Below, in pieces: positions 10,864-63,625 of a stretch of 64,000 nucleotides of DNA. The notes under the pieces are model-generated. The model was not told the origin of the DNA and did no database searches. It was given only the letters and a program-made list of their open reading frames with translations. The number at the start of each line of letters is the position of its first letter. Position 1 is the stretch's first letter. A program made the translations under genes and the position numbers. The DNA is taken from positions 310,001-374,000 of the IMG/VR virus record IMGVR_UViG_3300029893_000001; one strand, given 5' to 3'.

Positions 10864-11084
10864 TTTTGAGCCCTTTCTGCCTCCGTAGGAGGTCTTTTTC
10901 CTACTATTCATAGGGTTCGTTAACGACAAAAATCGGCCTTTTGGGGCCGCAAAGAGTGCGAAAACCTTGCGTTTCGGTGCCCCTAACGACAGCGTGAATG
11001 CTCACCCACAAGGTCATTTATAGGCGTGATCTAAGGGGTTATCTAGCCTCATTCCGACTATCCTTTTTACCGGGAAGTGCTGAG

Positions 11085-12263
11085 ATGCGACAAGATCTGA
11101 AGCTGCGACTTCAGCAAGTAGCCACAAAATTAGCGCTCGTACACCGCCTTCGAAAGGTCGCTCTGGCTACGGAAGAGGCGCTGATCGATCGCATGTCAGA
11201 GCGGTCCAAGAAGATTCTCTTGGACGTGCGCAGCAAATTCTTCCGTGCAGCCAAATACATTGAGCCCGCATTAGATGAGGCGGGTAGGACGGCCCTAAAC
11301 AAGGCGGTTAAAGAAGTAGGCAGGGTGGTCACAAATGCCGGCATAGTTGACGTGTCTGTGATCGAGGAAACCCATAATAGCCTAGACGATATGTGGAAAG
11401 AACTCTCGCGTGCCACGAGTGGCAACATTTCCGTGATGTACTTCTTCAATTCGTTTGACAGGTTTATCAAAGTCGCAATGCTAGGAGGCCTGCTTCAGAA
11501 TCACCGATTTGTGGAGCGCGCTAAGTCCGACCCTAGAGTACGGGAAAAGATTTACTCCGTAATGGAGAGGCTTGCGGAGCTTATCCCACAAGTACAATCA
11601 ATTCTGCAGAAGGCGATGGATTCTGTCAAGGTTGAGGCGCCTCCATCACAGCCCTCAAAGGAGATGAAGGATACCTCAGCGGAAGAAGCTGTCACGAATC
11701 AGCTAAGTGAAGCTGAATCACAGATGAGAGGCGTCGTTGACCAGCTTACGAAGGTCATCGTAGACAAGGCAGAAGAGTTGTTTGGCGTGGGCTCCGAGAT
11801 GGCCGAGGCGCTTGATGAGAATATCTTTGCAATCTACAACAAGCGACGAGTAAACCCTCAACTAAACCGGAATAGGAATTTCTATCAAGATGCATTGCAT
11901 CTGGAACACAGTCCGACTCACATTGATCTCGGAGAATTCCTAGACACCAAGGAAAAGAAGGCGATCTACCTTTCTTATCGGTCGTTCGTCATGGCAGCAC
12001 GGGCACTAGGTGTTGTGCAACACGCTAAAGCGAAACCCGAGCTAGTGCTGAAAAACCCGAAGCTTCGCGAGCTAGTCATCAAGGCGCAGCAAATCCTGAT
12101 GAAGCGCAAGGACACGATCGTACGATACTTGAAAGCGCTAAAGAAATCGAAAGAGGAAAAGAAGGACAAGGAGATCGGAATCCCTAAGGGGACATTCTCC
12201 GACTTCTTCGAGTCTCAGCAAGACGGCGGTACGTCCAGAGAACTTCCACGTGGCCTCTTTTGA
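11085..12263 (+). CDS. hypothetical helical protein, possibly virion-associated
   Basis: Long plus-strand ORF; likely start MRQDLKLRLQQVATKLA at 11085. Confidence 0.65.
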   Translation: MRQDLKLRLQQVATKLALVHRLRKVALATEEALIDRMSERSKKILLDVRSKFFRAAKYIEPALDEAGRTALNKAVKEVGRVVTNAGIVDVSVIEETHNSLDDMWKELSRATSGNISVMYFFNSFDRFIKVAMLGGLLQNHRFVERAKSDPRVREKIYSVMERLAELIPQVQSILQKAMDSVKVEAPPSQPSKEMKDTSAEEAVTNQLSEAESQMRGVVDQLTKVIVDKAEELFGVGSEMAEALDENIFAIYNKRRVNPQLNRNRNFYQDALHLEHSPTHIDLGEFLDTKEKKAIYLSYRSFVMAARALGVVQHAKAKPELVLKNPKLRELVIKAQQILMKRKDTIVRYLKALKKSKEEKKDKEIGIPKGTFSDFFESQQDGGTSRELPRGLF

Positions 12264-12457
12264 TGCGCTCCGCTTCTACGACGTTCCGAACGTGATAGCT
12301 CTGTAAACGGGGAGAAAGCGTACGTCGGGAACTACTCCCGACATCTCTTACGCTTAGACGGCCCTGTCCACAGGCTTATGTACTACAACAGCAGCAGCGG
12401 TTCAGAGCAGTCTGATTGTCTTGCCCCGCTTTTTGGGGCTTCTACTACGAGGATTGC

Positions 12458-13810
12458 ATGAGCAAGCCGCATCGAGGGACAACGAAGCATGTTTCTTGGA
12501 TGATCAAGAAAGTCATCGAAGTTGCAGAGAAGCTTGGTGTCCCGGTGAAGGACCTTCATCGAGACGTCTTCCTTAAGAATGCCGGGGATGACGTAACACG
12601 TACAGACATCGACGCGTGTATGGCCTGGTCTCATTTGAAGACTCTAGCCGACACGAAGAGCAAAGCGATCCATGGGCCTGTGGGAGCAGATGATCTCCCT
12701 CTCGACCCCGCTGTGCCGGATGGCTACTTTGTTAAGCAGATCTCGACTCAGCTAGACAAGGCCGGAGACATCGAACGTCAGTGGATCAAGACTCCCCTGA
12801 GTCAGGCTCCCGGCATGCTGACAGACCAAGTCCCCGAGGGACATATCATCTCGGGAGTATCGACTCTGGTTTCCGGAGATGGCAATACTCTTGCTCAGTG
12901 GGTAAAAACCAGGAAAGAATCAGAGAGTAGGGAAGAACTACTTCTTCGATTGATGCGCGAGCTTCCGACGCAGATTCCTGCGAGAGAAAGCAGCATTCCG
13001 AAGCCAACGGGCTCTCTTTCCGACGATTTGCTTGCGGTGTATCCTATGGGCGATCCCCATATCGGGATGCTGAGCTGGGCACCGGAGACGGGGGAGGACT
13101 TCGATCTAGGCAAAGCGCAGAAGGTGATGACTTCTGCGATGCAAGAATTGGTAACCAGGGGACCCCGAACCAAGCAAGCCTTGATCGTCAACCTCGGTGA
13201 TTTCTTCCACGCCGATAACGAGCAGAACAGAACATCCAGATCGGGCCATGCTCTCGACGTTGACGGCCGGTGGCCCAAGGTCCTCCAGGTTGGGATCGAA
13301 ATCATGGTATTCATGATCGATCAGGCCCTCAAGCATCATGAATCAGTTCGAGTCGTCAATGAAATTGGCAATCACGACGATCATTCTGCAATGTTCCTGA
13401 GTGTGGTTCTCAGTGCTTATTATCGAAACGAACCTCGCGTCGAAATCGATATGAGCCCCAGCCGCTTCCACTGGCATAGGTTTGGTAAGAACCTTATCGG
13501 AATCACACACGGCCACAATACAAAGCATGGTGACCTTGAGTCCATCATGGCTGCAGAGAGGGCCTCTGACTGGGGTGAAACGATTCATCGATTCTGGTAC
13601 TGCGGACACATCCACCATAGCGTCAAGAAGGAGATGCGGGGATGTGTCATCGAGTCATTCAGAACATTGGCACCAAGAGACGCCTGGGCAGCTAATGCTG
13701 GGTACCGCTCTGGCCGCGACATGAACCGCATCACTCTTCACCGTGAGTACGGCGAAGTCGGCAGAGAGATCGTGAACGCAGCCTACCTTCAGGCTCGTTA
13801 TCGAGATTGA
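12458..13810 (+). CDS. calcineurin-like metallophosphoesterase with N-terminal repeat
   Basis: GDPHIG, LGDFFH, GNHD, THGH, GHIHH; GAGG upstream of ATG 12458. Confidence 0.9.
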   Translation: MSKPHRGTTKHVSWMIKKVIEVAEKLGVPVKDLHRDVFLKNAGDDVTRTDIDACMAWSHLKTLADTKSKAIHGPVGADDLPLDPAVPDGYFVKQISTQLDKAGDIERQWIKTPLSQAPGMLTDQVPEGHIISGVSTLVSGDGNTLAQWVKTRKESESREELLLRLMRELPTQIPARESSIPKPTGSLSDDLLAVYPMGDPHIGMLSWAPETGEDFDLGKAQKVMTSAMQELVTRGPRTKQALIVNLGDFFHADNEQNRTSRSGHALDVDGRWPKVLQVGIEIMVFMIDQALKHHESVRVVNEIGNHDDHSAMFLSVVLSAYYRNEPRVEIDMSPSRFHWHRFGKNLIGITHGHNTKHGDLESIMAAERASDWGETIHRFWYCGHIHHSVKKEMRGCVIESFRTLAPRDAWAANAGYRSGRDMNRITLHREYGEVGREIVNAAYLQARYRD

Positions 13811-13812
13811 GG

Positions 13813-52756: not shown

Positions 52757-53095
52757 TCAGGCGGCCGTGCCGAGCACCTTGCCCATCGACAGGAACCGGC
52801 CCTTCTCCCCGCGGAGCCTCAGGCGCAGATCCCCGCTCTCGTGGGCGTCCCGGATCTTGTCGCCGAGGCTCACCCGCACCCCCGCCTGCTTGCCCTGCTT
52901 CCTCAGGAACTCGCGGGCCTCCTCCGCCTCCTGCTGCTGCGCCTGCTGCCGCTCCTTGAACTGGCGGCGGGACTTGGCCTCGCGCTCCTTCGCCTTGCGC
53001 TCCTCGGAATCCTGCCAGAAGCGGCGCTTCACCTCCGCCGGGTCGAGGCGGCGGGTTCCGGGGACGAGCGTGGTGCGGGTCGCGTTCGTGGTCAT
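52757..53095 (-). CDS. hypothetical cassette protein (charged coiled coil)
   Basis: Promoter motif at 53131, AGGAGG. Confidence 0.7.
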   Translation of the reverse strand: MTTNATRTTLVPGTRRLDPAEVKRRFWQDSEERKAKEREAKSRRQFKERQQAQQQEAEEAREFLRKQGKQAGVRVSLGDKIRDAHESGDLRLRLRGEKGRFLSMGKVLGTAA

Positions 53096-53220
53096 GATTA
53101 TTCCTCCTGGGCCGGAGCCCGTTGCCCCGACTAGTATCGGCCGGGTTCGGCCGACTAGGGAATTAAACGCGCAACGGCTGCGAGATTTCTCGCAGCCGTT
53201 GCTTGTGTAGAGTCAGTGGG

Positions 53221-53403
53221 TCAGGGGATGCTGACCTTCGCCTCGACCGTCGCGGAGTCGAGATCGATGGCCTCGCGGCACGAATCCACGTCCACGATGT
53301 CATCGTTACCCACGAGCACATCCCACACGAGAGATTCCGCCTGCTGGGGACTCTCGGCCGTGACTTTCACCGTCACGGTCACAGTGAACTCCTGATCTTC
53401 CAT
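53221..53403 (-). CDS. small acidic cassette protein
   Basis: Promoter motif at 53423; cassette flanked by 19-bp direct repeats. Confidence 0.7.
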   Translation of the reverse strand: MEDQEFTVTVTVKVTAESPQQAESLVWDVLVGNDDIVDVDSCREAIDLDSATVEAKVSIP

Positions 53404-53451
53404 TTTGCATTTCCCTCGCTAACTATTATCCGCAGGGTTGCTTGTGTAGAG

Positions 53452-53730
53452 TCAGCCCAGGTCGAAGGGGTACTCCGAAGTGACGTCGCCCCACAGACGA
53501 TCGTCGTCGCCGTAGTAGTGGTGCGTGGCCGTCTCCGGGATCACCGGATTCTCCCGGTCGTCGTTCCTGTAGACACAGAAGCGCTCCCCCGGGCAGCAGT
53601 CGCCCAGGAAAAGCATTCCCGCTCCCATCAGGACGATCGTCTCGGCCGGCGTTCCCTGCGGGGCCACGAAATGCACCACGGTGACGTCGCGGTCGCTTTC
53701 GTAGCGCACGGAGTAGTCGTTGACGTTCAT
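53452..53730 (-). CDS. hypothetical cassette protein
   Basis: Promoter motif at 53751, GAGGAGG. Confidence 0.7.
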   Translation of the reverse strand: MNVNDYSVRYESDRDVTVVHFVAPQGTPAETIVLMGAGMLFLGDCCPGERFCVYRNDDRENPVIPETATHHYYGDDDRLWGDVTSEYPFDLG

Positions 53731-53850
53731 TCGGCTTTCCTCCTCAGCGACTATTATCGTCGGGGTTCACGTCCGACACGAAAAGCGCGTTAAATGAAAC
53801 AACGGCTGCGAGAAATCTCGCAGCCGTTGCGTGCCTTGGGAACTTTGGAA

Positions 53851-54195
53851 CTACAGGACCACCCATCCCCAGAAGACGGCCCAGGCGATGAAGCGGATCG
53901 GCCAGCGGGTCCAGGAGTCATTCTGCCAGAGGCAGAGCAAAATCCAAGTGACCCCGAACGCCGGCCAGAGCGTATTGAACCACGGGATCACCTGGACGAT
54001 TCCGCACCAGATCCAGTACGTCAGCAGGAAGCACGTGGAAATGTTGCAGAAGAACTCCACCCAATCCGAGATTTCCATCTCGTTGTGCGGGGTGTAGATC
54101 GTCCGGCCCGTCTCGTGGTCCCTGTAGACCTTGTACGTGGCGCGGAGCGGGCGGATGCTCGGCTGGAGCCGGCGGATATTCTTCGGGTTGGGCAT
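53851..54195 (-). CDS. Trp-rich membrane protein
   Basis: Promoter motif at 54214; three hydrophobic segments. Confidence 0.7.
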   Translation of the reverse strand: MPNPKNIRRLQPSIRPLRATYKVYRDHETGRTIYTPHNEMEISDWVEFFCNISTCFLLTYWIWCGIVQVIPWFNTLWPAFGVTWILLCLWQNDSWTRWPIRFIAWAVFWGWVVL

Positions 54196-54290
54196 GGGTC
54201 GTCTCCTCGCTGACTATTATCAACAGGGTTCTCGCAGCCGTTGCGAGAAATTAAAGTAAGATGGCCCCGGGTTTCCCCGAGGCCCTCTTT

Positions 54291-54677
54291 TCATCCGAGC
54301 GGCTGACTGAGAGCCACCGCACGGCGTCGAGCGTGGATCGGATTGCTCTTCCAGAAGCGAGCCCAGAAATCGCGCTCCGCTTGCTTCGCCTCGTGCTCAT
54401 TCCTGTACTGCAATTGAACGAGCAGATCGGCGTATTCCCCATCCCACTTGGGGTCGTACTCCAGCGACTCACGAACGAGCTGGAATCCCTCCGTTTCGAC
54501 GACCGCCTCGGCCCGGAGCGCCCGGAGTCGGTACGGGACGAATCGGAGGAGCGCCTCCCGATAGTCAGCGTCGTTTGTGATGAATCGGCTCGCCTGTCGG
54601 AGCCAGTCGGCAGCCGACTGTTGCTCTTTCATGACTCGCCGATACAGCACCTCGGAGAACGGGATGATTTCTGCCAT
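54291..54677 (-). CDS. hypothetical cassette protein
   Basis: Promoter motif at 54696, GGGAGG. Confidence 0.7.
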   Translation of the reverse strand: MAEIIPFSEVLYRRVMKEQQSAADWLRQASRFITNDADYREALLRFVPYRLRALRAEAVVETEGFQLVRESLEYDPKWDGEYADLLVQLQYRNEHEAKQAERDFWARFWKSNPIHARRRAVALSQPLG

Positions 54678-54759
54678 TCAACCTCCCTTCGCCGATTATT
54701 ATCAGCAGGGTTCTGTGCGGCCGTGAATGTCCTTAAAGCACGAAAAGGCCCTTGCTAGG

Positions 54760-54915
54760 GCCCTTTCGCGGGTCATTTCGGCAAAAGCTGACCAGGCTCG
54801 GAATACCAAGGCACGTGGTCGTGTACCTTGGTTAGCCTTGCCCCTTTTCGAGTCCATTATTGGTGGCTCGCCTTACGGGTGGGAGGGTGCAGCCCGGATG
54901 GAAACGGAACGAGAA
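54760..54915 (-). ncRNA. candidate ncRNA cassette (~160 nt)
   Basis: Between the promoter motif at 54922 and hairpin-TTTAA at 54733; no SD-led ORF; 10-bp stem ACCAAGGTAC/GTGCCTTGGT and others. Confidence 0.45.
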
Positions 54916-54958
54916 CACCATTTAGTATCGCCAGGGTTCTCGCAGCGGCTGCGAATCC

Positions 54959-55159
54959 CTAAATCCCGATCCAGTAGTTGTCCAGGTCGCTCAGCTTCAC
55001 GCTGGTGATCTCGGGATTGTGGTCCGGCAGACGTTGCTTGGCGAGTCGACGGACGTGAACATCGAACTCCTTTTTGTCCCTCGTTCGCGTCAGGACCGTG
55101 AATCTGTCCACCGCCGACTTCCCGTCGACTTCGTAGCACAGTTCGATGAGATACTTCAT
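54959..55159 (-). CDS. hypothetical cassette protein
   Basis: Promoter motif at 55178, GAGGAGG. Confidence 0.7.
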   Translation of the reverse strand: MKYLIELCYEVDGKSAVDRFTVLTRTRDKKEFDVHVRRLAKQRLPDHNPEITSVKLSDLDNYWIGI

Positions 55160-55247
55160 TTTCCGCCTCCTCGCCGAATATTATTGGCAGGGTTCTCGCA
55201 GTGACGGCGAGAATTTAAATTGAGAAAGGCCCCTCGCGGGGCCCGTC

Positions 55248-55466
55248 TCAGTCGTCGCGGAGGCACGGGGTCGGTCCCCCGCAGAATCCGCAGCGCCCCG
55301 GATTGTGGTACGCTGAGAGCACGTGATTGTTGGCCACGTGCTCCGGCTCGAAATAGTCTTCGGTTTCCCGAACTTCCATTCCTTCCGGGGCTTGCTCGTC
55401 GTCGAGGAGACGCACGGCTCGTGCCGTGGTCTTGCCGGGGTTGGCAATGTAGTAGCGGATGGTCAT
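55248..55466 (-). CDS. hypothetical protein, probably leaderless
   Basis: ATG lies 7 nt after GATAAT of the promoter motif at 55472; no SD. Confidence 0.6.
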   Translation of the reverse strand: MTIRYYIANPGKTTARAVRLLDDEQAPEGMEVRETEDYFEPEHVANNHVLSAYHNPGRCGFCGGPTPCLRDD

Positions 55467-55491
55467 GCCGAATATTATCGGCAGGGTTGAA

Positions 55492-55564
55492 TCGGACCGG
55501 TGGGATTCGAACCCACAACGTCCCGGTTATGAGCCGGGGGCTCTAACCATTGAGCTACGGTCCG
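55492..55564 (-). tRNA. tRNA with CAT anticodon (Ile2 or elongator Met; not initiator)
   Basis: CGGACCG TAGCTCAATGGTTAGAGC C CCCGG CTCATAA CCGGG ACGTT GTGGG TTCGAAT CCCAC CGGTCCG A; paired 1-72; no encoded CCA. Confidence 0.93.
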
Positions 55565-55921
55565 ATGGTTTTCACTAGGTTACGTTTCGCGTTACTTTGT
55601 GCGAACGATTCAGGCCCAGATCCCAGGCGCCGAATCCGGTTGCTCCGGGATCGGGATGTATTGGTTTCCCACGAATCCCGCCGCCGCGTCCAAGGCGACC
55701 ACACGGGGGAATGTCACCGCAGGGTGCGGCTCATCCTCCCAATAGGCTTCCCACGCAGCCAGAGCGAGATACTGCAAGAGCAGTTTTTCCATTATTCACC
55801 TCCTCGCCGTATCCATACGGGCTTGCACCACTTTTCTCAATGACACGAGGCCTTGGGTCGCTGTCTTCCCACAAACGTATGGGTGCAACCCATACGTTTT
55901 CGCCTTTGGTGTACACGAGAA

Positions 55922-56380
55922 TCAACCTTGGACAAATTGATCGGGTGTTCCGCAGTTCCACACCCTCAAGGGTGTGCCCCAACGGGTCGGCTCCTCGGTC
56001 CAGTCGAAGTGGATCCGGCGGGAGTTCCCCTTCCGAATCCAGAACTTCCCCCTCGCATCCTGAGGCCGACTCCACACGTCGGCCGAGACGTTCATCGAGT
56101 CCAGGAGATCGTTGACGATTCCGTGGAAATCCACCCAATCCTGCCACTCCAGAAAGCGAGCCTTCGGCTTCTTGCGGGGCGGGAAAGTGACGACGCACTC
56201 TCCGGGGTGATTCCCGCAGTATTCCTTCGCGGTCACGAGGCGGACGCGCTTCAGAAGGATCGTCTGGCCATCGACGCACGATTCCACGTTGAAGCGACCG
56301 TCGGCCCGCACCTTCTTTTGAAGGGCTACGTGGATTCGCTCGACGTCGCTGCCGTCGAGCACCTTGATTGAGTACGGCAT
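55922..56380 (-). CDS. hypothetical cassette protein
   Basis: Promoter motif at 56413, GGAGG. Confidence 0.72.
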   Translation of the reverse strand: MPYSIKVLDGSDVERIHVALQKKVRADGRFNVESCVDGQTILLKRVRLVTAKEYCGNHPGECVVTFPPRKKPKARFLEWQDWVDFHGIVNDLLDSMNVSADVWSRPQDARGKFWIRKGNSRRIHFDWTEEPTRWGTPLRVWNCGTPDQFVQG

Positions 56381-56491
56381 GATTATTCCTCCGTGGGTTG
56401 GTCCAGCGAGCTTTAGTATCGGGAGGGTTCTCGCCGTGGCTGCGAGAATTAAACTGGAAACGGGCCCCGGGAAAACCCCGGAGCCCGTTTT

Positions 56492-56854
56492 CTAGAACTC
56501 GCCCTCGTCGTCGTCCACCGCGTCGAGTGCGTCTGGACGTCCGAGGCCGCCGTCGGGCCCATGAGGGTGGTACCTCTTTTCCTTGTGGATGTCCAGAAAG
56601 AAGAGCGCCTCTTGCAGCGAACGCACCCTCTTTGGATTCTTCGTCCGCACCATTTTTGGGTTCGTCAGGGAATCCTTCGAGACCCACTCCTCGACGAGAA
56701 AGAAAACCTCCGGGCACCCATCGAGAGGAGCCGAGGGCCCGGTAATATTCTCGATGACGGTCGAGATTCGGCCTCGCTCGTCCGAGAAAATCACCGTGGT
56801 CGGCTCGAAATCGGTGAGCTTTTCGATGATTTCACTGTAGGTGAACTTTCGCAT
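56492..56854 (-). CDS. hypothetical protein
   Basis: AAGGGA SD, followed by hairpin-TTTAA at 56449. Confidence 0.65.
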   Translation of the reverse strand: MRKFTYSEIIEKLTDFEPTTVIFSDERGRISTVIENITGPSAPLDGCPEVFFLVEEWVSKDSLTNPKMVRTKNPKRVRSLQEALFFLDIHKEKRYHPHGPDGGLGRPDALDAVDDDEGEF

Positions 56855-57030
56855 TTGTTCCCTTCTACCGACGGTATCGGTACTCCTCGTCCACCTCTTG
56901 CTGCGTGGGCTCCCTTCCGAGCCTCTTGCGCAGATCGTCGCGGGCCGCGTTCCACTTGCGCTCGTCCTCCGCCCTTTCGAGAGCGCAGGCCGAGCATCCC
57001 ATCATCATGCACATGGTCGCCTCCCTCTGA

Positions 57031-57245
57031 GAGCGAGGCTCGGAGCCGGAATCCGAGATTAGTCTGTTTTCGCCTCTTGGCCTAGCTCCGCCTCCGTGCC
57101 TAAACCTACACGGCCAGCCTCTACACTAGGTTGCAGACGAATCCAGGGTCTAGCCGCTTTTGCCTTGGATGACTAGTCCTCGGCGCTTGCACCCACGGGG
57201 GCGTCACCCCTTGGGGTATCTGGATTCCGGCTCCGAGCCTCGCTC
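57031..57245 (-). ncRNA. candidate structured ncRNA (~215 nt) with 24-bp closing stem
   Basis: Perfect inverted repeat 57031-57054 / 57222-57245 just downstream of the promoter motif at 57260; internal hairpins; no ORF. Confidence 0.7.
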
Positions 57246-57351
57246 CTCGCCGTCGTGGTCTACTATCAGGAGGGTTCAACTCCTCTAATTAAACAGAGAA
57301 AGGGGCCTGTGGCCCTTCTCCCTGTTTTGGAATCTCGCAGTGGCGGCGAGT

Positions 57352-57990
57352 CTAGTAGGCCCGGCTCACCACCGGAAGCCCACGCAGTTCCTCGACTATT
57401 CCCTTGAAGGCGACCTCGACCTCGCCGGTGTCGGGCAGCTCGACCGTGCGATCGATTCCGTAGAGATCCTCCAGGAACTCCCGGAATCCAGGCGTGTCGC
57501 CGCGGAACGGCTTGTTGAGAAGCCACTCCGCGAACTCTTCTCGGCGATTCCAATCCAGATCCTTGGCGACCTGCGTACCGATTGCCACCCCGAGGATACA
57601 ATATCCTCGGACATCCCAACGATCGATGAACGACCTCGCGCTGCTGTCGCTCGAAAAGACTCGACACGAGTAGTGCACGTGCCAGTAGCCCCACTTCGCC
57701 GCCGGCTCGCTCTCCCTCACGTCGTCCATGGAGGCGTAGGAACCCATTTCCGGGCCCCACCCATCCGACGACGGCATCGCCCTGACGAACGTATGGGCAC
57801 TGTCGTAGCGATTTCGGATGAAGCTGCCGTCCGGCATCTTGAAGGCGTTGATCTGGTGGCAGTGCGGGTGCTTGAGATCCTCCTCCAGCGACTGCTTTGC
57901 GCTCTCGACGCTGCGCTCGCAAAAGAACCTCCACGAGAGCACCGCGCTGATGAGCCGCTGCCAGACCTTGTGAGAAATCTTGTTGTTCAT
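57352..57990 (-). CDS. hypothetical cassette protein
   Basis: GAGGAGG SD; partial promoter motif at 58013. Confidence 0.7.
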   Translation of the reverse strand: MNNKISHKVWQRLISAVLSWRFFCERSVESAKQSLEEDLKHPHCHQINAFKMPDGSFIRNRYDSAHTFVRAMPSSDGWGPEMGSYASMDDVRESEPAAKWGYWHVHYSCRVFSSDSSARSFIDRWDVRGYCILGVAIGTQVAKDLDWNRREEFAEWLLNKPFRGDTPGFREFLEDLYGIDRTVELPDTGEVEVAFKGIVEELRGLPVVSRAY

Positions 57991-58279
57991 TGTTCTGCCC
58001 TCCTCGCTCTAACTATTATCGTCGTCGACTACGATCCGATGCTCCCCATTCGCGGCGCATGCTGAATCACGTAGGAGACGCCGGTCAAAACCCAGCCAGC
58101 GGGAGTGTGGCCGTAGATGTTCACGCAGAACGTGAACACCAACACGGCGACGATGACGTACCACCTCTTGAGGGTTTCCACGATTGATTGACCTCCTCTC
58201 GCCGAACTATTATCGACGGGGTTCGCCGTCATATCGAGAACGACGAAATGCCCTCCGGGACTTACCGGAGGGCATTTCG

Positions 58280-58555
58280 TCAGGATTCCACGATCTTGCC
58301 GGCGTCGAGATCCACGAAACCGATGTGGACGTACTTCCAGCCCGTGCTTCCAATGAGCGTGGGCGAATCCGGGAGACGCTCCGGAGCCTCGGCGAACGTG
58401 CAGCCCTCTCCGACGAGCAGGAACGCCAAGTGGCCGAATCCAGAGGAATCCACCGCCGCGTTTTGGTAGGCTGCCCAGCGAGTTCGCTCGCGCTGTCGAG
58501 CGCGCATTTGGCTCAGGACTTCCTCGTCGATTTGGAGATCATTGGTCGTCATCAT
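58280..58555 (-). CDS. hypothetical protein
   Basis: Coupled downstream of the 58561-58932 gene. Confidence 0.65.
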   Translation of the reverse strand: MMTTNDLQIDEEVLSQMRARQRERTRWAAYQNAAVDSSGFGHLAFLLVGEGCTFAEAPERLPDSPTLIGSTGWKYVHIGFVDLDAGKIVES

Positions 58556-58560
58556 GTCCC

Positions 58561-58932
58561 TCAGTACAGGTTCACGTAGACGCTATCGCCCACGATTTCC
58601 ATCGCGTCCCGGACCTTTTGGGCCGCGTTCATTTCCTCGACTTCGCAGCGATCCCACGTCGCTCTCTGGTCGAGCACGTCGCGGAGAGCAGCCGGCGTGA
58701 CGAGCACCACTTCGGTGTCGCCCCAGGTGAACGCGTTGGTGATGAGTTCCGAGACGATCTCGTATTCCTCTTCGGAGAGGAACTCCGAGAGCGTGATGAA
58801 CTGGCACTCGAAAAGCGTCGGTCGCTTCATGGCCTCCTTTCGGTCGCAGTCTTCGCAGTTGCCTGGACCGCGAAACTCGAAGACAGTCGGACTGATTTCC
58901 TGGCCACACGTCTTGCAATGATATTCGGCCAT
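58561..58932 (-). CDS. hypothetical zinc-finger-containing protein
   Basis: Start MAEYHCKTCG after GAGGAG; promoter motif at 58950. Confidence 0.68.
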   Translation of the reverse strand: MAEYHCKTCGQEISPTVFEFRGPGNCEDCDRKEAMKRPTLFECQFITLSEFLSEEEYEIVSELITNAFTWGDTEVVLVTPAALRDVLDQRATWDRCEVEEMNAAQKVRDAMEIVGDSVYVNLY

Positions 58933-59020
58933 GTTTTTCTCCTCGCCTATTATTATCGACGGGGTTCGTGGTAACGACAAACGCAGAATAGGCCCCGAGT
59001 TTCCCCGGAGCCTATCTCTC

Positions 59021-59395
59021 TCACTTGTTCCTGAAGTACGTCTCGTACCCGATGTCCTTGGTGGACATCAGATTGTGCTTGAGATTCATGGACTCGCCGC
59101 TGAGCATGCGGCGCATTTCCTTCTCGCTGACGAAATCCACCCACTTCTCGTCGTGTTCGGGCCGAATCATGTGGTAGTTCTCGGGGTGAGAGCCCGTCGA
59201 ATCGTAGTCGGTCCACTTCATGATCTGTTGCGTGGTCCATCCGACCGCCGGCATTCCGGTCATGTCGTAGCACCCGCGATTGACCAATTCGGTGGCCACC
59301 ACTTCGTGCCCTTCGATGACCAGCTTGACGATCGGCCAGTCCTCGGGATCGAGAACGTTGTCGCTGAGTCGGGCGTAGAGAATCGGCTTTCGCAT
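59021..59395 (-). CDS. hypothetical protein
   Basis: GAGGAGG immediately after hairpin-TTTAA at 59408. Confidence 0.7.
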   Translation of the reverse strand: MRKPILYARLSDNVLDPEDWPIVKLVIEGHEVVATELVNRGCYDMTGMPAVGWTTQQIMKWTDYDSTGSHPENYHMIRPEHDEKWVDFVSEKEMRRMLSGESMNLKHNLMSTKDIGYETYFRNK

Positions 59396-59440
59396 CTTAC
59401 CTCCTCGTTAAACGCGAAAAGGCCCCTTTCGGGGCCTCTG

Positions 59441-59833
59441 CTATTCCTCGGGAGCAAGTAGCAGCATGGTTTCGGCGGCGTGAGTCAGCGCACCCCACTG
59501 GAGTGCTTCCTCCTCGCACACCGCCTTGTACGCGCGTTGAAGTACACGCAGAAGCACACGCTGCTCGAATTGAATCCGAGCCTCGCCGATCATTTCGTCG
59601 AGGGGCGGGCCCTCGTCGTTGTAGTAGGCGATGCACGCCGGCTTCATCTGCGGGAACGTCTCGCAGTACAGCCAGTCGAGCACGCTCTTGTATTCGTCTT
59701 CCCTCGGAGGGGCGATCTTTCGCAGCGCCTTGGCGTGTTTGCTCGTGCGGAGCCACGCCTCGACCTCCGGGAAGAGGCTCGACGTGAGAGGCCCTCGAAC
59801 GACGCAAACGCACACCATCTGGAGAGCACTCAT
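59441..59833 (-). CDS. hypothetical protein
   Basis: GAGGAGG SD just downstream of tRNA-Glu. Confidence 0.68.
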   Translation of the reverse strand: MSALQMVCVCVVRGPLTSSLFPEVEAWLRTSKHAKALRKIAPPREDEYKSVLDWLYCETFPQMKPACIAYYNDEGPPLDEMIGEARIQFEQRVLLRVLQRAYKAVCEEEALQWGALTHAAETMLLLAPEE

Positions 59834-59859
59834 TATTCACCTCCTCGCCATTATTGAAT

Positions 59860-59932
59860 TGACCCCAACGGGATTTGAACCCGTGTTCTCGCCGTGAAAG
59901 GGCGGCGTCCTAGGCCACTAGACGATGGGGCC
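59860..59932 (-). tRNA. tRNA-Glu(TTC)
   Basis: GGCCCCA TCGTCTAGTGGCCTAGGAC G CCGCC CTTTCAC GGCGA GAAC ACGGG TTCAAAT CCCGT TGGGGTC A; promoter motif at 59946; no encoded CCA. Confidence 0.95.
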
Positions 59933-60210
59933 GTGTCCTCGCCGATTACTATCGGCGGGGTTCACTTCTTTCCGTGGGTGGACTCCCACCATTTCAGATA
60001 CTCGTAATCCTTTCGGTCGAGCATCCGATAATAGGACTCGGGGTCCGCGTCGAGTTGGTATTCATTCTCAGCGGCGTTTTGGTCGACGCCAGGAAATGTC
60101 TCCTCGTACCTGACTCGTCGATTTTTCTTACGCTGTTTCTGCTGTCGTCGCCGTCGCATGGGATATTATTCCTCGGGTTAACGCCGAATAGGCCCCGAAA
60201 GGCCATCGGC

Positions 60211-60408
60211 AGAAGCGAATCGCAGTGGGGAGGCCTACAGAGGCGGATAAAGGCAAACCAATACCCGGAACCCTCGGTTCCGACGGGATTCGAACCCGCA
60301 TCACCGCCGCACCTGGTGCCACAGGACGCCCACTAGACAGCTCCGCGTTGGCACTCACGGAACGTTCATCGTAGGTCCCTGTAAGCCGCCCCACTGCGAT
60401 TCGCTTCT
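60211..60408 (-). ncRNA. candidate ncRNA (198 nt) with permuted tRNA-like (YrlA-type) module and kissing loops
   Basis: 20-bp perfect inverted repeat 60211-60230 / 60389-60408 extended by 11 bp; T arm GCGGG-TTCGAAT-CCCGT, loop-closed acceptor CGGAACC-GAG-GGTTCCG, D-like arm; followed by hairpin-TTAA at 60178. Confidence 0.72.
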
Positions 60409-60419
60409 TGGTTATTGTT

Positions 60420-61170
60420 TCCGCAGATTCAGTTTCCTCCGCCCTGCGCTGCGGCTCAATCTGAGTGACCATGAGAAGGGAGTGCAGTATTCGTTAGCCT
60501 CGTTGGAGATAGTGTGCCCTTTGACTGCCGAGGGTGCAATAGCAATCTGCACCTAAACATAGGCCCGGCAATCTACAGACGATAGTCCAGCGAAGCACCG
60601 AACAATGCGTGTAACCTACGCGATGGTCAAACAATCGAGATGAGTACGAAAGGGAGTTAATTGGCGAGTCAAGGCGTCCTCCTAACGAGACTCTTTTGGG
60701 CCAGCTTTCGCTTTTAAGTGGCGTGGAGGTACGACACAATCTGCAACGTCCAGTAGCAGAAGCCCTGCCCTTGTACTCAGAACATTATCCAGCATATGCT
60801 GGAAGCGAATGGCTATGTTCCTTCGCCACCCGTTCCCCTTGAGCCGCCTTTAGCGGACGCTCATTGGTCCTATCGGAAGCCTAGGCACATCTTGCCCAAG
60901 ATTCCAATAGTATCAATTCAATCTCCGAGCGGTCCAGCCAGGGGGACCGATCCCTGCCACGAACTTAGCGGCGGCGCGTCATTCGTGGCTATATAGTCTC
61001 GAAGTGGTTACGACTCTTGCCCGACAAGTGTCGCAGCAATCAACTGGTCCAGGGGAAGGATTCAGTTGAGTAGGTATGCTTAGTTGCTTCTTGGCGGGTT
61101 TCCTACTAAACCCAGCCAGTCATAAGCTGTAGAACAGGAGAATCATTTCCAGTCCTCCGGCTGTGGGATT
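60420..61170 (-). ncRNA. candidate large structured ncRNA (~750 nt)
   Basis: No credible ORF in an otherwise gene-dense region; dense hairpins and long-range stems; strand inferred from neighbours. Confidence 0.5.
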
Positions 61171-61205
61171 CATTAAACGCGAAGAGGGGCCCGAAGGCCC
61201 CTCTT

Positions 61206-61760
61206 CTATGCGTCCACCATCGCCCGACGGCTCCAGTAGAGGATTGCCTTGGCGAAATCCTCCGCCGAATAGGTGGCCGGCGTTCCTCCGGGGAGACCCA
61301 GGAAGTTGCGGGCCATCGCCATCGGAGTCTGGGGCTCCGGCTCCTCGGTGGGGCGGGCGTTGATCGAGACGATCTCCCACTCGCATTCCGTCGAGGCGTC
61401 GTTGCCGAGAACGTCGTGCCTGTAGAGCACGATCTCGACGACCTTCGCGGGAGCCTTCTCGCCCTTCGCACGCACCTCGATGTAGGGCTCCTCGCCCTCT
61501 CGCCGCGCCGAGAACGTCGCCCGGAGCGTCGTCTTCGGAGTGACCTCGATGACGCCACACTTGAAGTAGTGCGCCTGACTCTCGGTCATCGGGATGAGCA
61601 GAACGCCGTCGCGGTAGCCCGGCTTCGCCTCGGAGAACTGCTGCTCGACGAAAGCGATGAGCACATCCCACTTCGCATCGTGGGTGGCGATGAAGTGTGA
61701 GAAGGGGCTCTCCGGCGTCTGGCGACGCACGAAGTCATTGATTCCGATGAGGTTACCCAT
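61206..61760 (-). CDS. DUF3228-like protein
   Basis: INDFVRRQ, PGYRDGV, FSARREGEEP, IVLY, WEIVSIN, PMAMARNFLGLPGG; promoter motif at 61792. Confidence 0.72.
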   Translation of the reverse strand: MGNLIGINDFVRRQTPESPFSHFIATHDAKWDVLIAFVEQQFSEAKPGYRDGVLLIPMTESQAHYFKCGVIEVTPKTTLRATFSARREGEEPYIEVRAKGEKAPAKVVEIVLYRHDVLGNDASTECEWEIVSINARPTEEPEPQTPMAMARNFLGLPGGTPATYSAEDFAKAILYWSRRAMVDA

Positions 61761-61807
61761 GATTGATTCGGCCTCCCTTTGCCTCGCCAAACTACTATCG
61801 ATTGGGT

Positions 61808-62020
61808 TCAGTCCCTCTCGATCGCGGAGAAGTCTCCCAGGTTCCACGTGGTGTGAGTGGGCTGCATGATGCCGAGAACCTGAGTTCCGTAGTTCTTCTC
61901 GTAATCCCAGGTGTTGAAGTCGCCCCGCGACTGAGCGTAGGCAGCGATGACAGCCTCTCGTGGAGAGCACGAAAACGTCTGCTCGTGGCAGGTGGCGAGG
62001 TTGAGGACAGTGGTGAACAT
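61808..62020 (-). CDS. hypothetical protein
   Basis: Start MFTTVL after GAGGAGG following hairpin-TTTAA at 62040. Confidence 0.65.
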   Translation of the reverse strand: MFTTVLNLATCHEQTFSCSPREAVIAAYAQSRGDFNTWDYEKNYGTQVLGIMQPTHTTWNLGDFSAIERD

Positions 62021-62072
62021 GATTGATTTCCTCCTCTCATTAAACGCGAGAAGGGGCCCGAAGGCCCCGTTC

Positions 62073-62490
62073 TTAGTGACTCCAGGAGCGACGCACACCC
62101 TTCGAGAGGCGGCGAATCATTCGCTCCTCCTGAGCGATGACCTTCCTGGCGACCGGATTGAAATCGCGCAGGTCATCGCGCGTTGGGTAGATCCGGTCGA
62201 TGTCCAGTCCGAATCCCCTACCGCTGTGATGGCTGAAGAGACTTACATGACCAGGAAAAGCCATCGTCTCGATGTAGTGTCCAATCACGACTGTCGAGAT
62301 CGTGACGTGCCGGGTCTTGCACCACGTGCGGTACTCCGGACGAAAGAGATCCCAGGACTTCGGGATGCGCCGTCCGTACCACCGGATGATCGGCTGCTTG
62401 AAGACGACCTTCGTGACCCTCTGGACCTGACCGTCCTTGTGGGTGATGATCTCGGTGGAGCGCCGGAGAGCGCCGGAGAATGTTGCTCAT
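62073..62490 (-). pseudogene. cassette gene frameshifted by a 10-bp tandem duplication
   Basis: GCGCCGGAGA x2 at 62460-62479; removing one unit gives a single 135-aa ORF joining ATG 62490 to the 62073-62288 frame. Confidence 0.75.
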
Positions 62491-62608
62491 GATTGATTGC
62501 CTCCTCTGATTGATTGCCTCCTCGCTCAACTATTATCGGCGGGGTTCAGCGTTCTCTTAAACGCGAGAAGGGGCCCGAAGGCCCCTCGTACGCAGCTCAC
62601 TTAGTGAG

Positions 62609-63232
62609 CTAGTTGGTCTCCGAAGGAGGCGGCAGGACAGCCGATGGCCTTCGGGGAGACGCCCACTTTTCCGCGGCCTGTTCGATGTTGCCATCCGTCA
62701 GGGTGCCGACTTCCATCCTGATGAAGTGCATCGCCTCATTTCGGTAACGATCTGCTTCGAGCGAATCGCAGAAGACCTCGACGAGATTCTTCGCGTCGGC
62801 CAGACCGAGGCCGTGCATCTCGCGGGCCTTCTTGATGGCGGGGATCTTCCTGCCAGTGTTGTTCGGACCTCCGACCACCGCCATGAACTTCGCGGCGGGA
62901 TCGAGATCCTTGACGGGGAAGGGGCACTGCTTTCCGATGTTGCCTCGGATGCGATCGTTGTCGTACTTGAGGCGACCGTTCTCCTGTCGGAGCGTCGCGA
63001 TCTCTTCGCGCTGAAGAGCCACGGTCTTGTTCATGTGAGACCACTCACAGACCATCGCCGACGCATCGGCGTGGATCGACTCCAAGAGCGACGAGGCGCC
63101 GAGCACCATCGCATAGATGGGCACCAACACCAGGTTGAAGGGCTCGTCCTCGACCTGTTCCTTGAGACGGTCCGCGGCGTCTCGGACCATCGTCGTCAGG
63201 ATCTCCAGGTTCTTCACGAACGTGTCGTACAT
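62609..63232 (-). CDS. protein with ribosomal L7/L12 C-terminal-like domain
   Basis: RKIPAIKKAREMHGLGLADAKNLVE; GGAGG; promoter motif at 63263. Confidence 0.72.
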   Translation of the reverse strand: MYDTFVKNLEILTTMVRDAADRLKEQVEDEPFNLVLVPIYAMVLGASSLLESIHADASAMVCEWSHMNKTVALQREEIATLRQENGRLKYDNDRIRGNIGKQCPFPVKDLDPAAKFMAVVGGPNNTGRKIPAIKKAREMHGLGLADAKNLVEVFCDSLEADRYRNEAMHFIRMEVGTLTDGNIEQAAEKWASPRRPSAVLPPPSETN

Positions 63233-63625
63233 TACCAATTCCTCCGGGCCAGAAGTTGGCACTTAGTATCGCCAGGGTCCAACCCCTTAAGCAAGAAAAG
63301 GGCGGCCCCGAAGGACCGCCAATTCATCGGTACATGTTGGCTTCCTGATGGGAAGCCCAATCGTCGTTGACGATCTCGGCGAGTTTGCGAGCAACCTGCT
63401 CACCGTACTTCGAGATCCACTCTTGGAGTTGTTCCCCCGAGAGCGGCTTGATCTCGTATCCGACCATCGGGTCGGAAGCCGGAAGAGCAGGGAAAACCTG
63501 CGGCGGGTCCGAGAAGGCAAACTTGGTGGGTTGCATCGTCTCGACGACGGTGGCGATCACGAGATATTCCACTCCATCCAGAGTGAACTCGTGCTCCCTT
63601 TCGGGATAGGTGAAGCTCTTGTGAT

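What the first reader, a model, noticed from the sequence alone, without database searches (positions are those of the whole stretch)
10901..63280. Compact phage-specific promoter consensus GAACCC-N4-RATANT
Seen: about 30 co-oriented copies with invariant 4-nt spacing, including one heading the replication operon (10901) and one before tRNA-Glu. I did not see a conserved -35 hexamer. Inference: recognised by a phage-encoded sigma factor/RNA polymerase or an activator-assisted host enzyme; GAACCC occupies an extended -10 position rather than the ECF -35 position.
Basis: partly seen in the sequence, partly recalled or inferred. Interest (0 to 1): 0.65.

Follow-up and report, generated by a model that had tools for sequence, protein, structure and literature searches.

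The report
Huge-phage promoter with phage-specific dialects
A 392-kb phage from subsurface samples marks about 75 of its early, tRNA and replication transcription units with one sharply defined 17-19-bp promoter-like signal that has no -35 box; related huge phages keep the signal in the same places but each spells it differently, so a phage-made factor, probably the phage's own sigma protein, most likely reads it.

Summary
GAACCC-N4-RATANT occurs 27 times exactly in the window (0.04 expected), plus 3 variants, all on the minus strand. The whole 392,328-bp phage has 67 exact copies and 74 PWM sites, none on the other strand. There is no conserved -35.

Sites lie between an intrinsic terminator and an RBS or tRNA. 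A pile-up of leaderless genes at hexamer-N7-ATG puts the start 7-8 nt after RATANT, which is sigma70-type geometry.

New finding: three related huge phages carry the same architecture in other dialects (CAACCC-TGGC-CATACT, AACCC-TTCy-CATAGT, AAAGTCC-GAC-GATACT), often upstream of orthologous genes such as rIIA. So the sites are conserved promoters that changed in concert.

None of the three complete genomes checked (G000, G001, G004) has a recognisable RNA polymerase or an excess of canonical sigma70 promoters. Each of the four has one RpoD-like sigma with a clipped region 4.2.

Best reading (about 0.5): host core RNAP plus this phage sigma reads the motif. The assignment is unproven: the sigma gene lies outside the motif regulon, and a second, dialect-free motif (CTGTAAA) heading the structural block is a rival target. 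No RNA data exist.

The parts
10903..10918 (-). Class-I promoter-like site (GAACCCTATGAATAGT), weakest exact copy (18.8 bits); heads the replication/nucleotide operon running down to about window position 300
   Evidence: downstream genes annotated (exonuclease 9657-10526, dUTPase 8828-9292, helicase 7143-8828, exonuclease 5873-6676, DnaB-like 3969-5300, clamp-like 1313-2389); G001 orthologue of the first gene also has a class-I site
22257..22272 (-). Class-I site, 90 nt before CDS 21780-22166
30953..30968 (-). Class-I site (perfect consensus, 31.7 bits), 20 nt before CDS 30390-30932
38683..38698 (-). Class-I site before CDS 38238-38627
39994..40009 (-). Class-I site; hexamer-N7-ATG (ggcagccATG), candidate leaderless start
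43647..43662 (-). Class-I site; ATG 9 nt after the hexamer
46829..46844 (-). Class-I site before CDS 46481-46789
50230..63280 (-). Motif-dense accessory ('early') zone. It holds 23 class-I sites, starting at 50230, 50825, 50970, 51515, 51679, 51961, 52498, 53133, 53425 (CAACCC), 53753, 54216, 54698, 54924, 55180, 55474 (CAACCC), 56415, 57262, 58209, 58952, 59948, 61794, 62532 and 63265 (GGACCC). Each is 16 nt long and mostly sits 15-40 nt before an RBS and the ATG of a small ORF. GC is 58-66% here.
59948..59963 (-). Class-I site 15 nt upstream of the 5' end of tRNA-Glu(ttc) 59860-59932
55474..55489 (-). Class-I variant (CAACCCTGCCGATAAT) starting 2 nt after the 3' end of tRNA-Met 55491-55565; hexamer-N7-ATG leaderless candidate (attcggcATG)
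53171..53202 (-). Intrinsic-terminator hairpin with a 14-bp stem (GCAACGGCTGCGAGA-AAT-CTCGCAGCCGTTGC plus T-rich tail), 23 nt upstream of the class-I site at 53133. A near-identical copy lies at 53799-53830. Further terminators lie at 54263-54284, 57303-57315 and 63301-63320, each just upstream of a class-I site.
   Evidence: 31 terminator-like sites vs 13.1 +/- 2.9 in shuffles; 49% of class-I sites have a hairpin of -15 kcal/mol or stronger within 80 nt upstream, vs 17% of random positions
9645..9651 (-). Class-II motif CTGTAAA, 8 nt before the ATG of CDS 9292-9636 inside the replication operon. Other window copies: 25288-25294 and 49328-49334 (intergenic), 36640-36646 (inside a CDS).

Best explanation
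The motif is the main promoter class ('class I') of a 392-kb phage that brings no RNA polymerase of its own. It drives the many small accessory (early-type) genes, rIIA, several tRNAs and replication/nucleotide operons. It does not drive the virion structural block.

How it works, as inferred. The downstream half, (G/C)ATAnT-A, acts as a sigma70-family -10 element, with A at -11 and T at -7. Transcription starts 7-8 nt after it. The adjacent N4 and the upstream AACCC-type block (-22..-13) replace the missing -35 box as the specificity and affinity determinant.

The upstream block is invariant within a genome but differs between related phages at orthologous promoters. So its reader is phage-encoded. 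The most likely reader is the single RpoD-like sigma that each of these phages encodes (P0001 here, genome 246993-248345, minus strand), bound to host core RNAP. Its region 4.2 is shortened and clipped, which fits promoters without a -35 box.

Shown: the motif statistics, context, dialects, orthologous placement, leaderless spacing, absence of a recognisable phage RNAP, and presence and architecture of the sigma. Inferred: that the motif fires transcription, and that this sigma is what reads it.
For: 1. Statistics: 27 window sites and 67 genome sites, all on one strand, against 0.04 expected. PWM scores are bimodal, 74 sites at 16 bits or more.

2. Context: sites sit after terminators and before an RBS-ATG or tRNA. 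The gap to any tRNA 5' end is at least 11 nt.

3. Start site: ORFs without a Shine-Dalgarno pile up at exactly hexamer-N7-ATG. Counts are G000 4, G001 3, G008 5 of 7. That is sigma70-type geometry, not T7-type.

4. Dialects: G004 CCAACCCTGGCCATACTAG (49 sites), G001 cAAAGTCCGACGATAcTAA (46-63 sites), G008 AACCCTTCyCATAGTAG (17 sites), each on the gene strand.

5. Orthologous placement: 11 of 20 G001 orthologues of G000 class-I genes also have a site, against 10 of 228 for other genes (Fisher p = 9e-9). For G004 it is 6 of 12 against 5 of 183 (p = 5e-6). Examples include rIIA in all four phages.

6. No phage RNAP: T7 RNAP phmmer/tblastn best E = 0.36; Rpb2_6 and Rpb1_2 give nothing; no DFDGD motif.

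7. Canonical TTGACA-N17-TATAAT promoters are not enriched upstream of genes in three phages.

8. One sigma per genome. It matches Sigma70_r2 at 31.6-35.3 bits and phrog_351. It aligns to RpoD/SigA/RpoS regions 2-4, and its model aligns along full-length sigma70. Region 4.2 has a 4-residue deletion and the protein ends right after AERLRQVSAL.

9. Region 2.4 differs from primary sigmas where -12 is read (WWIRQSMLYY vs WWIRQAITRS), and class I has G/C rather than T at -12. Residue 304 is Y in the two phages with G at -12 and H in the two with C at -12.

10. The G000 downstream half, GCCGATAa, equals the composite -10 of sigma28. That is a precedent for sigma70-family proteins reading a long -10 with an upstream extension (PMC12784957). 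phiEco32 and 7-11 are precedents for phage sigmas with promoters lacking a -35 (PMC4331800).
Against: There are no transcript data: only DNA runs hold this phage.

The sigma gene lies in the one region without class-I sites and has no recognisable host-type promoter. How sigma would be present before the early genes is therefore unexplained.

The sigma's DNA-reading helices 2.4 and 3.0 are almost invariant across phages whose dialects differ at -12..-16. G001 has the most similar sigma (68%) but the most divergent upstream block. The residue-304 correlation rests on a single phylogenetic branch.

No sigma70-family protein is known to read bases at -22..-17 (my knowledge).

Several positions that I recall as forming the -11A pocket are changed in P0001 (Y425A, R423S, Y430H in E. 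coli numbering; alignment, residue roles from memory).

A second motif, CTGTAAA, is identical in all relatives and heads the structural block. It could be the sigma's true target, as in the T4 gp55 paradigm.
Confidence: 0.5

Rival explanations
1. T4-like division of labour. The host primary sigma reads the -10-like hexamer of class I. A separate factor, either an unidentified phage protein or a host-specific component, reads the upstream AACCC-type block. The phage sigma P0001 instead serves the second motif class CTGTAAA, which drives middle and late genes including the structural block.
For: CTGTAAA is the same word in G000, G001, G004 and G008, as are the sigma's helices 2.4 and 3.0.

It is strand-biased: 31 vs 4, 49 vs 4, 37 vs 13 and 27 vs 2. 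It is about five-fold enriched in intergenic DNA (p between 2e-8 and 4e-16). It piles up at 8-9 nt before start codons.

A divergent pair heads the structural block with the portal gene, and that block is conserved in G001. It is absent from the class-I-only zone.

The sigma gene lies in the class-II zone. In every characterised case I know, phage sigmas drive middle or late genes, not the earliest ones. TGTAAAGA resembles the T4 late promoter TATAAATA (my knowledge).
Against: The block lies only 4 bp from the hexamer, where RNAP itself sits. Class I has G/C at -12 rather than the T expected for primary sigmas. No gp55-like or second sigma was found. CTGTAAA is short, and several copies are inside genes.
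Confidence: 0.25
2. An unrecognised phage RNA polymerase, for example a very divergent or virion-packaged enzyme among the large unannotated proteins, reads the motif as one contiguous promoter, T7/N4-style.
For: A contiguous 17-19-bp one-strand block that evolves in concert with the phage is what T7-group promoters look like. Several giant ORFs (2813, 1687, 1156, 931 aa) have no Pfam, PHROG or PDB match. This would solve the time-zero problem.
Against: No T7-like RNAP, no multisubunit RNAP domains or DFDGD signature. The inferred start lies 7-8 nt beyond the conserved block, whereas T7-type promoters run up to +1. The hexamer has the A-11/T-7 signature of sigma70-family elements. Transcription units end in bacterial-type intrinsic terminators.
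Confidence: 0.08
3. The motif is not itself a promoter. It is a binding site for a phage regulator (operator) or an RNA-level signal such as a processing site or 5' leader element.
For: The upstream block is fully invariant, as for operator sites. The motif is always on the transcribed strand, so it could also act in RNA if transcription began further upstream.
Against: About half of the sites lie directly after strong terminator hairpins, and no other conserved element lies between terminator and gene. The hexamer-N7-ATG leaderless spacing and the gaps of at least 11 nt to tRNA 5' ends fit a start site, not a processing site. The motif is asymmetric, unlike typical dimer operators.
Confidence: 0.07

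Closest known systems
Promoters of phage-encoded sigma factors without a -35 element (phiEco32 gp36, TAATGTATA; phage 7-11, TG-TGATGT-TATA)
   Same: A phage-specific single-region motif centred on a -10-like element, with no -35. It is found by over-representation upstream of co-oriented genes in a phage that encodes its own sigma and uses host core RNAP (PMC4331800).
   Different: Here the block is twice as long (17-19 bp), reaching -22. There are about 75 copies, including the early-type zone. The sigma is RpoD-like (450 aa with an NCR-like N-domain) rather than a small ECF-like protein. The sigma gene is not preceded by the motif. Related phages show discrete dialects.
Sigma28 (FliA) composite -10 element GCCGATAA
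   Same: The G000 consensus tGCCGATAa is letter for letter the sigma28 -10 region (-15 to -8). It includes the 'GC' extension read in duplex form and A-11 (PMC12784957). This shows that sigma70-family proteins can read a long -10.
   Different: Sigma28 promoters need a TAAA-type -35 about 15 bp upstream; class I has none. The other dialects (GGCCATAC, TCTCATAG, GACGATAC) depart from GCCGATAA. The AACCC block has no counterpart. P0001 scores higher with RpoD/RpoS models than with FliA.
Extended -10 (TGnTATAAT) promoters, including the -35-less middle/late promoters of Thermus phages (my knowledge)
   Same: -35-independent initiation, compensated by bases just upstream of the hexamer. TG is present in the G000 and G004 dialects.
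   Different: TG lies two bases, not one, from the hexamer, and it is absent in G001 and G008. Position -12 is G/C rather than T. A further invariant block lies at -22..-17.
T7-group promoters and their RNAP-specific dialects (T7, T3, SP6, K11)
   Same: A contiguous block of about 18 bp. It is nearly invariant within a genome and differs between related phages in a few positions, changing at all sites in concert.
   Different: No single-subunit RNAP gene is present. The inferred start is 7-8 nt beyond the block, not at its end. The hexamer looks like a sigma-type -10.
T4 temporal classes (early sigma70, middle MotA/AsiA, late gp55 TATAAATA)
   Same: Dense individual promoters and terminators on small early genes; rIIA under an early/middle promoter. 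A second short A-rich motif (CTGTAAA) appears in later regions and resembles TATAAATA. A sliding-clamp gene is present.
   Different: There are no canonical sigma70 early promoters. There is no MotA-box spacing: the upstream block lies 4 bp, not about 12 bp, from the hexamer. The sigma is full-length RpoD-like, not a gp55-type fragment.

Membership tests
Sigma70-family -10 element | Hexamer with A at position 2 and T at position 6 (-11A, -7T) | tested here: met
   A and T are invariant in 67 of 67 sites and kept in all four dialects
Sigma70-family -10 element | Transcription start about 7 nt downstream of the hexamer | tested here: inconclusive
   There is only indirect support. ORFs without a Shine-Dalgarno pile up at hexamer-N7-ATG in three phages, and tRNA 5' ends are never closer than 11 nt. 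No RNA data exist.
Canonical bipartite sigma70 promoter | TTGACA-like -35 hexamer 16-18 bp upstream of the -10 | tested here: not met
   Information content is under 0.2 bit at all but one of the positions from 45 to 13 nt upstream of GAACCC (0.41 bit at -12). Sigma70-type sites are not above shuffled expectation.
Extended -10 promoter | TG exactly one base upstream of the hexamer (TGnTATAAT) | tested here: not met
   TG lies two bases upstream in G000 and G004 (TGCC-GATAnT, TGGC-CATACT) and is absent in G001 and G008
ECF-sigma promoter | AAC-containing -35 separated by about 16-17 bp from a CGT-type -10 | tested here: not met
   The AAC block lies 4 bp from the hexamer in every copy
Sigma28/FliA promoter | -10 GCCGATAA plus a TAAA-type -35 about 15 bp upstream | tested here: not met
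   The -10 half matches in the G000 consensus only. No conserved TAAA lies upstream, and the other dialects differ. Consensus taken from PMC12784957.
Sigma54 promoter | GG-N10-GC (-24/-12) | tested here: not met
   The consensus yGAACCCTGCCGATAnTA has no GG/GC pair at that spacing. Only the one-helical-turn, two-block layout is similar.
T7-like single-subunit RNAP promoter | A cognate single-subunit RNAP gene in the genome | tested here: not met
   phmmer and tblastn with T7 RNAP against three proteomes and genomes give a best E of 0.36. PF00940 found nothing, but its control was void.
T7-like single-subunit RNAP promoter | Conserved block runs up to the start site (+1) | tested here: not met
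   Conservation ends 1-2 nt after the hexamer, and the inferred start is 7-8 nt after it
Jumbo-phage multisubunit RNAP promoters (phiKZ/AR9 type) | Phage-encoded beta/beta'-like subunits | tested here: not met
   No Rpb2_6 or Rpb1_2 match. No DFDGD-type signature in any ORF of three phages.
Phage-sigma-dependent promoter (SPO1, T4 late or phiEco32 type) | Phage encodes a sigma70-family protein | tested here: met
   P0001 matches Sigma70_r2 at 31.6-35.3 bits, above the cut-off. It also matches phrog_351 and RpoD/RpoS/SigB models, PDB sigma chains, and its model matches sigma70 by fold. Orthologues are present in all relatives.
Phage-sigma-dependent promoter (SPO1, T4 late or phiEco32 type) | That sigma, with core RNAP, initiates at the motif | not testable with these tools
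   This needs in vitro transcription or genetics. Only circumstantial evidence exists.

The most novel reading that the evidence does not exclude
The phage is independent of host sigma factors from the first minute. Its RpoD-like sigma, encoded among late-zone genes, would be made late, packaged and delivered with the DNA (or made from a handful of cryptic promoters). It would convert host core RNAP to read a 17-19-bp single-face promoter whose upstream block at -22..-17 is a previously undescribed sigma-read element. That element co-evolves with the phage, giving each huge-phage lineage a private promoter dialect.
Probability: 0.15. Interest if true: 0.85.

Novelty: new variant of a known kind. 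Interest (0 to 1): 0.6.

Why it matters
Huge phages from metagenomes often encode sigma factors, but what those sigmas read is essentially unknown.

This lineage offers a clean, testable case. It has about 75 near-identical promoters with no -35 box, an invariant block at an unusual position (-22..-17), and four natural dialects at orthologous promoters. It also has a single RpoD-like sigma with a clipped -35-reading helix, no phage polymerase, and no ordinary host-type promoters.

If the sigma reads the motif, it defines a new way for a sigma70-family protein to recognise DNA. It would also yield orthogonal sigma/promoter pairs. If it does not, an unknown factor awaits discovery. Either way the motif gives a ready map of transcription units for annotating this 392-kb genome.

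Tried and rejected
- A scan of viral contigs for the exact core GAACCCTGCCGATA gave only single chance hits.
- The exact motif is absent from five relatives. This led to the discovery of dialects rather than to a dead end.
- The partial relatives G002, G003, G005, G006 and G007 gave no class-I-like motif. Their over-represented words were coding tandem repeats, as were G008's top words.
- CTTTTAAC, cgcgTTTAA and TCTCGCAGCCG, first considered as -35-like or operator elements, are terminator tails and stems at variable distance.
- TCTAAA as a late promoter: too few sites, rejected.
- Canonical sigma70 promoters show no enrichment.
- The weak Sigma70_r4 hits are a 208-aa protein with a faint regulator match and a 109-aa winged-helix early protein. 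Neither is informative.
- The hunt for a hidden polymerase among giant ORFs (Pfam, PHROGs, PDB sequences, atlas) found nothing. One atlas call failed on length.
- Sigma/dialect covariation gave one suggestive column (residue 304 vs the -12 base), but it reflects a single branch.
- G001's 'terminal repeat' is only 127 bp, so it says nothing about which DNA enters first.
- Sequencing runs are DNA only. Reads show the same sequence in three studies, so there is no strain variation to test selection on the motif.
- blastn of 8 kb against known phages found no match. The portal is only about 32% identical to those of known jumbo phages.

Full report
**Observation.** The pattern GAACCC-N4-RATANT has 27 exact matches in the window, all on the minus strand, against 0.04 expected from shuffles. 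Allowing one mismatch adds five hits. A position weight matrix keeps three of them: CAACCC at 53425 and 55474, and GGACCC at 63265. It rejects 31296(+) and 60165, giving 30 sites. The window is positions 310001-374000 of a 392,328-bp virus record rated complete. The whole record has 67 exact copies, all on the reverse strand, none forward and none in the reversed-pattern control. PWM scores are bimodal: 74 sites at 16 bits or more, only three minus-strand sites between 8 and 16 bits, and nothing above 11 bits on the other strand. The consensus is y-GAACCC-TGCC-GATAnT-A-r. Positions from 45 to 13 nt upstream of GAACCC carry less than 0.2 bit each, apart from one at 0.41 bit, so there is no -35 hexamer. 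Apart from tRNA arm sequences, these are the most over-represented words in the genome.

**Context.** Almost all genes are on the minus strand, apart from a plus-strand structural block at 259-305 kb that contains the portal. Class-I sites sit 15-60 nt before an RBS and start codon, or 11-31 nt before tRNA 5' ends. In the GC-rich, small-gene zone (window 50-63 kb) each gene is bracketed by a terminator, a class-I site and an RBS. Terminator-like hairpins number 31 against 13.1 +/- 2.9 expected. Genome-wide, 49% of sites have a hairpin of -15 kcal/mol or stronger within 80 nt upstream, against 17% of random positions. The repeated TCTCGCAGCCGTTGC and TTTAA words that looked like extra promoter elements are the stems and tails of these terminators. 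The site at 10903 heads an operon of exonuclease, dUTPase, SF2 helicase, exonuclease, DnaB-like helicase and clamp-like factor. Another site precedes rIIA, and others precede tRNA-Glu, tRNA-Gln and a CTA-anticodon tRNA. No class-I site lies between 184 and 309 kb except one variant at 269,843.

**Start site from sequence alone.** Among sites followed within 15 nt by an ATG or GTG that opens a long ORF, there is a pile-up at exactly 7 nt between the hexamer and an ATG with no Shine-Dalgarno: four in G000, three in G001 and five of seven in G008. In one orthologous pair the spacing is identical in G000 and G001. This is the signature of leaderless mRNAs. No RNA runs hold this phage. Only DNA runs from subsurface and rock metagenomes do, with essentially identical sequence. 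The start therefore remains inferred.

**Relatives and dialects.** The phage encodes one sigma70-family protein, P0001 (450 aa). Searching viral contigs with it found eight relatives. None carries the exact motif. De novo word statistics on the two complete relatives revealed one-strand motifs of the same architecture: CCAACCCTGGCCATACTAG in G004 and cAAAGTCCGACGATAcTAA in G001. In the 240-kb contig G008 the dialect AACCC-TTCy-sATrGT-AG emerged from the regions upstream of the rIIA orthologue and another orthologue. It has 17 copies, all on one strand. Aligned on the hexamer, A2, A3, C6, A12, T13, T16 and A17 are common to all four. Positions 1, 4, 5, 7-11 differ between phages but are nearly fixed within each.

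The sites are positionally orthologous. Of G000 genes headed by class I that have a G001 orthologue, 11 of 20 orthologues also carry G001's version, against 10 of 228 for other genes (Fisher p = 9e-9). For G004 the figures are 6 of 12 against 5 of 183 (p = 5e-6). So conserved promoters changed their sequence in concert, which implies a trans-acting reader that differs between phages. The five shorter contigs cover mostly the conserved core and gave no class-I motif.

**What could read it.**
- A T7-like RNAP is absent. phmmer and tblastn with T7 RNAP, fetched, give a best E of 0.36 in three genomes.
- There are no beta/beta' Pfam domains and no DFDGD signature in any ORF.
- Large unannotated proteins (2813, 1687, 1156 aa and others) match nothing in Pfam, PHROGs, PDB sequences or the atlas. 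A very divergent polymerase therefore cannot be formally excluded, but nothing supports one. The inferred start 7-8 nt beyond the conserved block also argues against T7-type recognition.
- Canonical TTGACA-N16-18-TATAAT promoters are not enriched upstream of genes in any of the three complete phages or around the sigma operon. A few isolated candidates exist, including TTGACT-N18-TAGAAT just upstream of the class-I site before rIIA.
- Each genome has exactly one sigma gene, with no paralogue by a family HMM over six-frame ORFs.

**The sigma.** Residues 207-449 of P0001 align to regions 2, 3 and 4 of SigA, SigB, RpoS and RpoD. The AlphaFold model has mean pLDDT 62.7, with a confident helical N-domain at residues 60-240. 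It aligns along full-length E. coli sigma70 chains. P0001 is therefore RpoD-like, including a region 1.2/NCR-like part. Against B. subtilis SigA, the region 4.2 helix-turn-helix has a 4-residue deletion, and the protein stops right after AERLRQVSAL, so the end of the recognition helix is missing. This fits promoters without a -35 box.

Across nine orthologues from phages of 37-57% GC, regions 2.3-2.4 are nearly invariant and region 3.0 fully invariant (...ARWWIRQsmLyyLKE...VSSNTWQHYAKL). The 4.2 helix and the tail vary. Region 2.4 differs from primary sigmas at the positions that face -12/-13, and class I has G/C, not T, at -12. Residue 304 is Y in the two phages with G at -12 and H in the two with C. 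However, this and seven similar columns map to one branch of the tree, so they count as a single event. G001 has the sigma closest to ours (68%) yet the most divergent upstream block, and its private substitutions are conservative.

**A second motif.** CTGTAAA (CTGTAAAG/A in G001) is strand-biased with the genes in G000 (31 vs 4), G001 (49 vs 4), G004 (37 vs 13) and G008 (27 vs 2). About half of the sense copies are intergenic although only about 10% of the DNA is non-coding (p between 2e-8 and 4e-16). Gaps to start codons pile up at 8-9 nt and are never shorter. A divergent pair, TTTACAG-N22-CTGTAAA at genome 271038-271079, heads the structural block, inside a block conserved in G001. The word is the same in all relatives. 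It is absent from the class-I-only zone, mixed with class I in the tRNA/replication zone, and the only signal in the core that holds the sigma and structural genes. It is a plausible later promoter class and a rival target for the sigma.

**Weighing.** That class I is a promoter I rate at about 0.9. For its reader, the phage sigma on host core RNAP is the most economical candidate, for five reasons:
- It is the only specificity factor found.
- It is present in every phage with a dialect.
- It has the right kind of -10 chemistry to read A-11/T-7.
- Its clipped region 4.2 fits the missing -35.
- Its altered region 2.4 fits the non-T at -12.

Precedents exist for sigma70-family proteins reading a long composite -10: sigma28 reads (-15)GCCGATAA(-8), identical to the G000 half-site (PMC12784957). 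Precedents also exist for phage sigmas with -35-less promoters, in phiEco32 and 7-11 (PMC4331800).

Against this:
- The sigma gene lies outside the class-I regulon, with no visible host-type promoter.
- Its DNA-reading helices barely vary while the dialects do.
- No sigma is known to read -22..-17.
- The CTGTAAA class fits the classical 'phage sigma = late genes' pattern.

I therefore put the sigma assignment at about 0.5, the T4-like alternative at about 0.25, a hidden polymerase at about 0.08 and a non-promoter role at about 0.07.

**Comparison and novelty.** The motif works like a sigma-type, -35-independent promoter. It fails the defining tests for canonical sigma70, extended -10, ECF, sigma28, sigma54, T7-type and jumbo-phage multisubunit-RNAP promoters (see the membership table). 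The lineage is uncharacterised: there is no nucleotide match to known phages, and the portal is about 32% identical to those of Vibrio, Dickeya, Erwinia and Rhizobium jumbo phages. I file the motif as a new variant of a known kind, a phage-specific promoter. Its unusual features are an invariant block at -22..-17, four natural dialects at orthologous sites, and no ordinary host promoters.

Noticed in passing
window 9645-9651, 25288-25294, 49328-49334 (minus strand); genome G000:C1:271038-271079 (divergent pair); also G001, G004, G008: A second, dialect-free motif, CTGTAAA(G/A). It is strand-biased with the genes and about five-fold enriched in intergenic DNA in all relatives. Gaps to start codons pile up at 8-9 nt, which suggests leaderless mRNAs. 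A divergent pair heads the structural block. It resembles the T4 late promoter TATAAATA (from memory). It is a candidate middle/late promoter class.
   Followed up: partly
window 50000-64000 (genome 360-392 kb and 0-40 kb): The class-I-dense accessory zone has 58-66% GC, against about 52% in the rest of the genome. It is poorly conserved in relatives and contains no CTGTAAA. In this zone position 7 of the motif is variable (T in 16 of 36 sites), whereas elsewhere it is T in 37 of 39.
   Followed up: partly
window 53171-53202 and 53799-53830: Two near-identical terminator hairpins with 14-bp stems. Public assemblies of the same phage break their contigs exactly at these repeats.
   Followed up: yes
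genome G000:C1:89-181 kb, 306-309 kb; window 55491-55565, 59860-59932: 44 tRNA genes, all on the gene strand, plus a tmRNA at 130644-131041. They include a tRNA with anticodon CTA (amber-reading, labelled Pyl by ARAGORN) at 105653-105726, which has its own class-I site 23 nt upstream. No alternative code was assumed.
   Followed up: no
genome G000:C1:37518-37547 and 37497-37512: rIIA has a sigma70-like TTGACT-N18-TAGAAT immediately upstream of its class-I site. This may be a tandem host-type plus phage-type promoter. A few other sigma70-like sites precede tRNA-Thr and tRNA-Met. None is statistically enriched.
   Followed up: partly
window 29222-30250 and 18899-19798: A Ser/Thr protein kinase fused to an N-terminal DnaJ domain, and an ADP-ribosylglycohydrolase. 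Both are enzyme types that phages use to modify host proteins.
   Followed up: no
genome G000:C1:184527-187412: A family A DNA polymerase with an N-terminal uracil-DNA-glycosylase-superfamily domain and a 3'-5' exonuclease domain, all in one 961-aa protein.
   Followed up: no
genome G000:C1:296869-305310 (+), 215990-221053 (-), 168538-172008 (-): Giant ORFs of 2813, 1687 and 1156 aa with no match in Pfam, PHROGs or PDB sequences. The 2813-aa ORF closes the structural block.
   Followed up: partly
window 51490-51494: All public runs read A, G and C at 51490, 51492 and 51494, where the record has G, C and T. This small cluster of differences lies in the 5' leader downstream of the class-I site at 51515 and does not touch the motif.
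   Followed up: no
genome G000:C1:245840-246928 (L009:3-1004, minus strand): The gene just downstream of sigma encodes a 334-aa protein with a long, highly acidic, repetitive C-terminal tail (DDDFEDDEEE...). It is possibly an SSB-like protein or a DNA mimic. The gene upstream encodes a 153-aa protein with a CxCxxxF-type zinc-finger-like motif conserved in G001.
   Followed up: no
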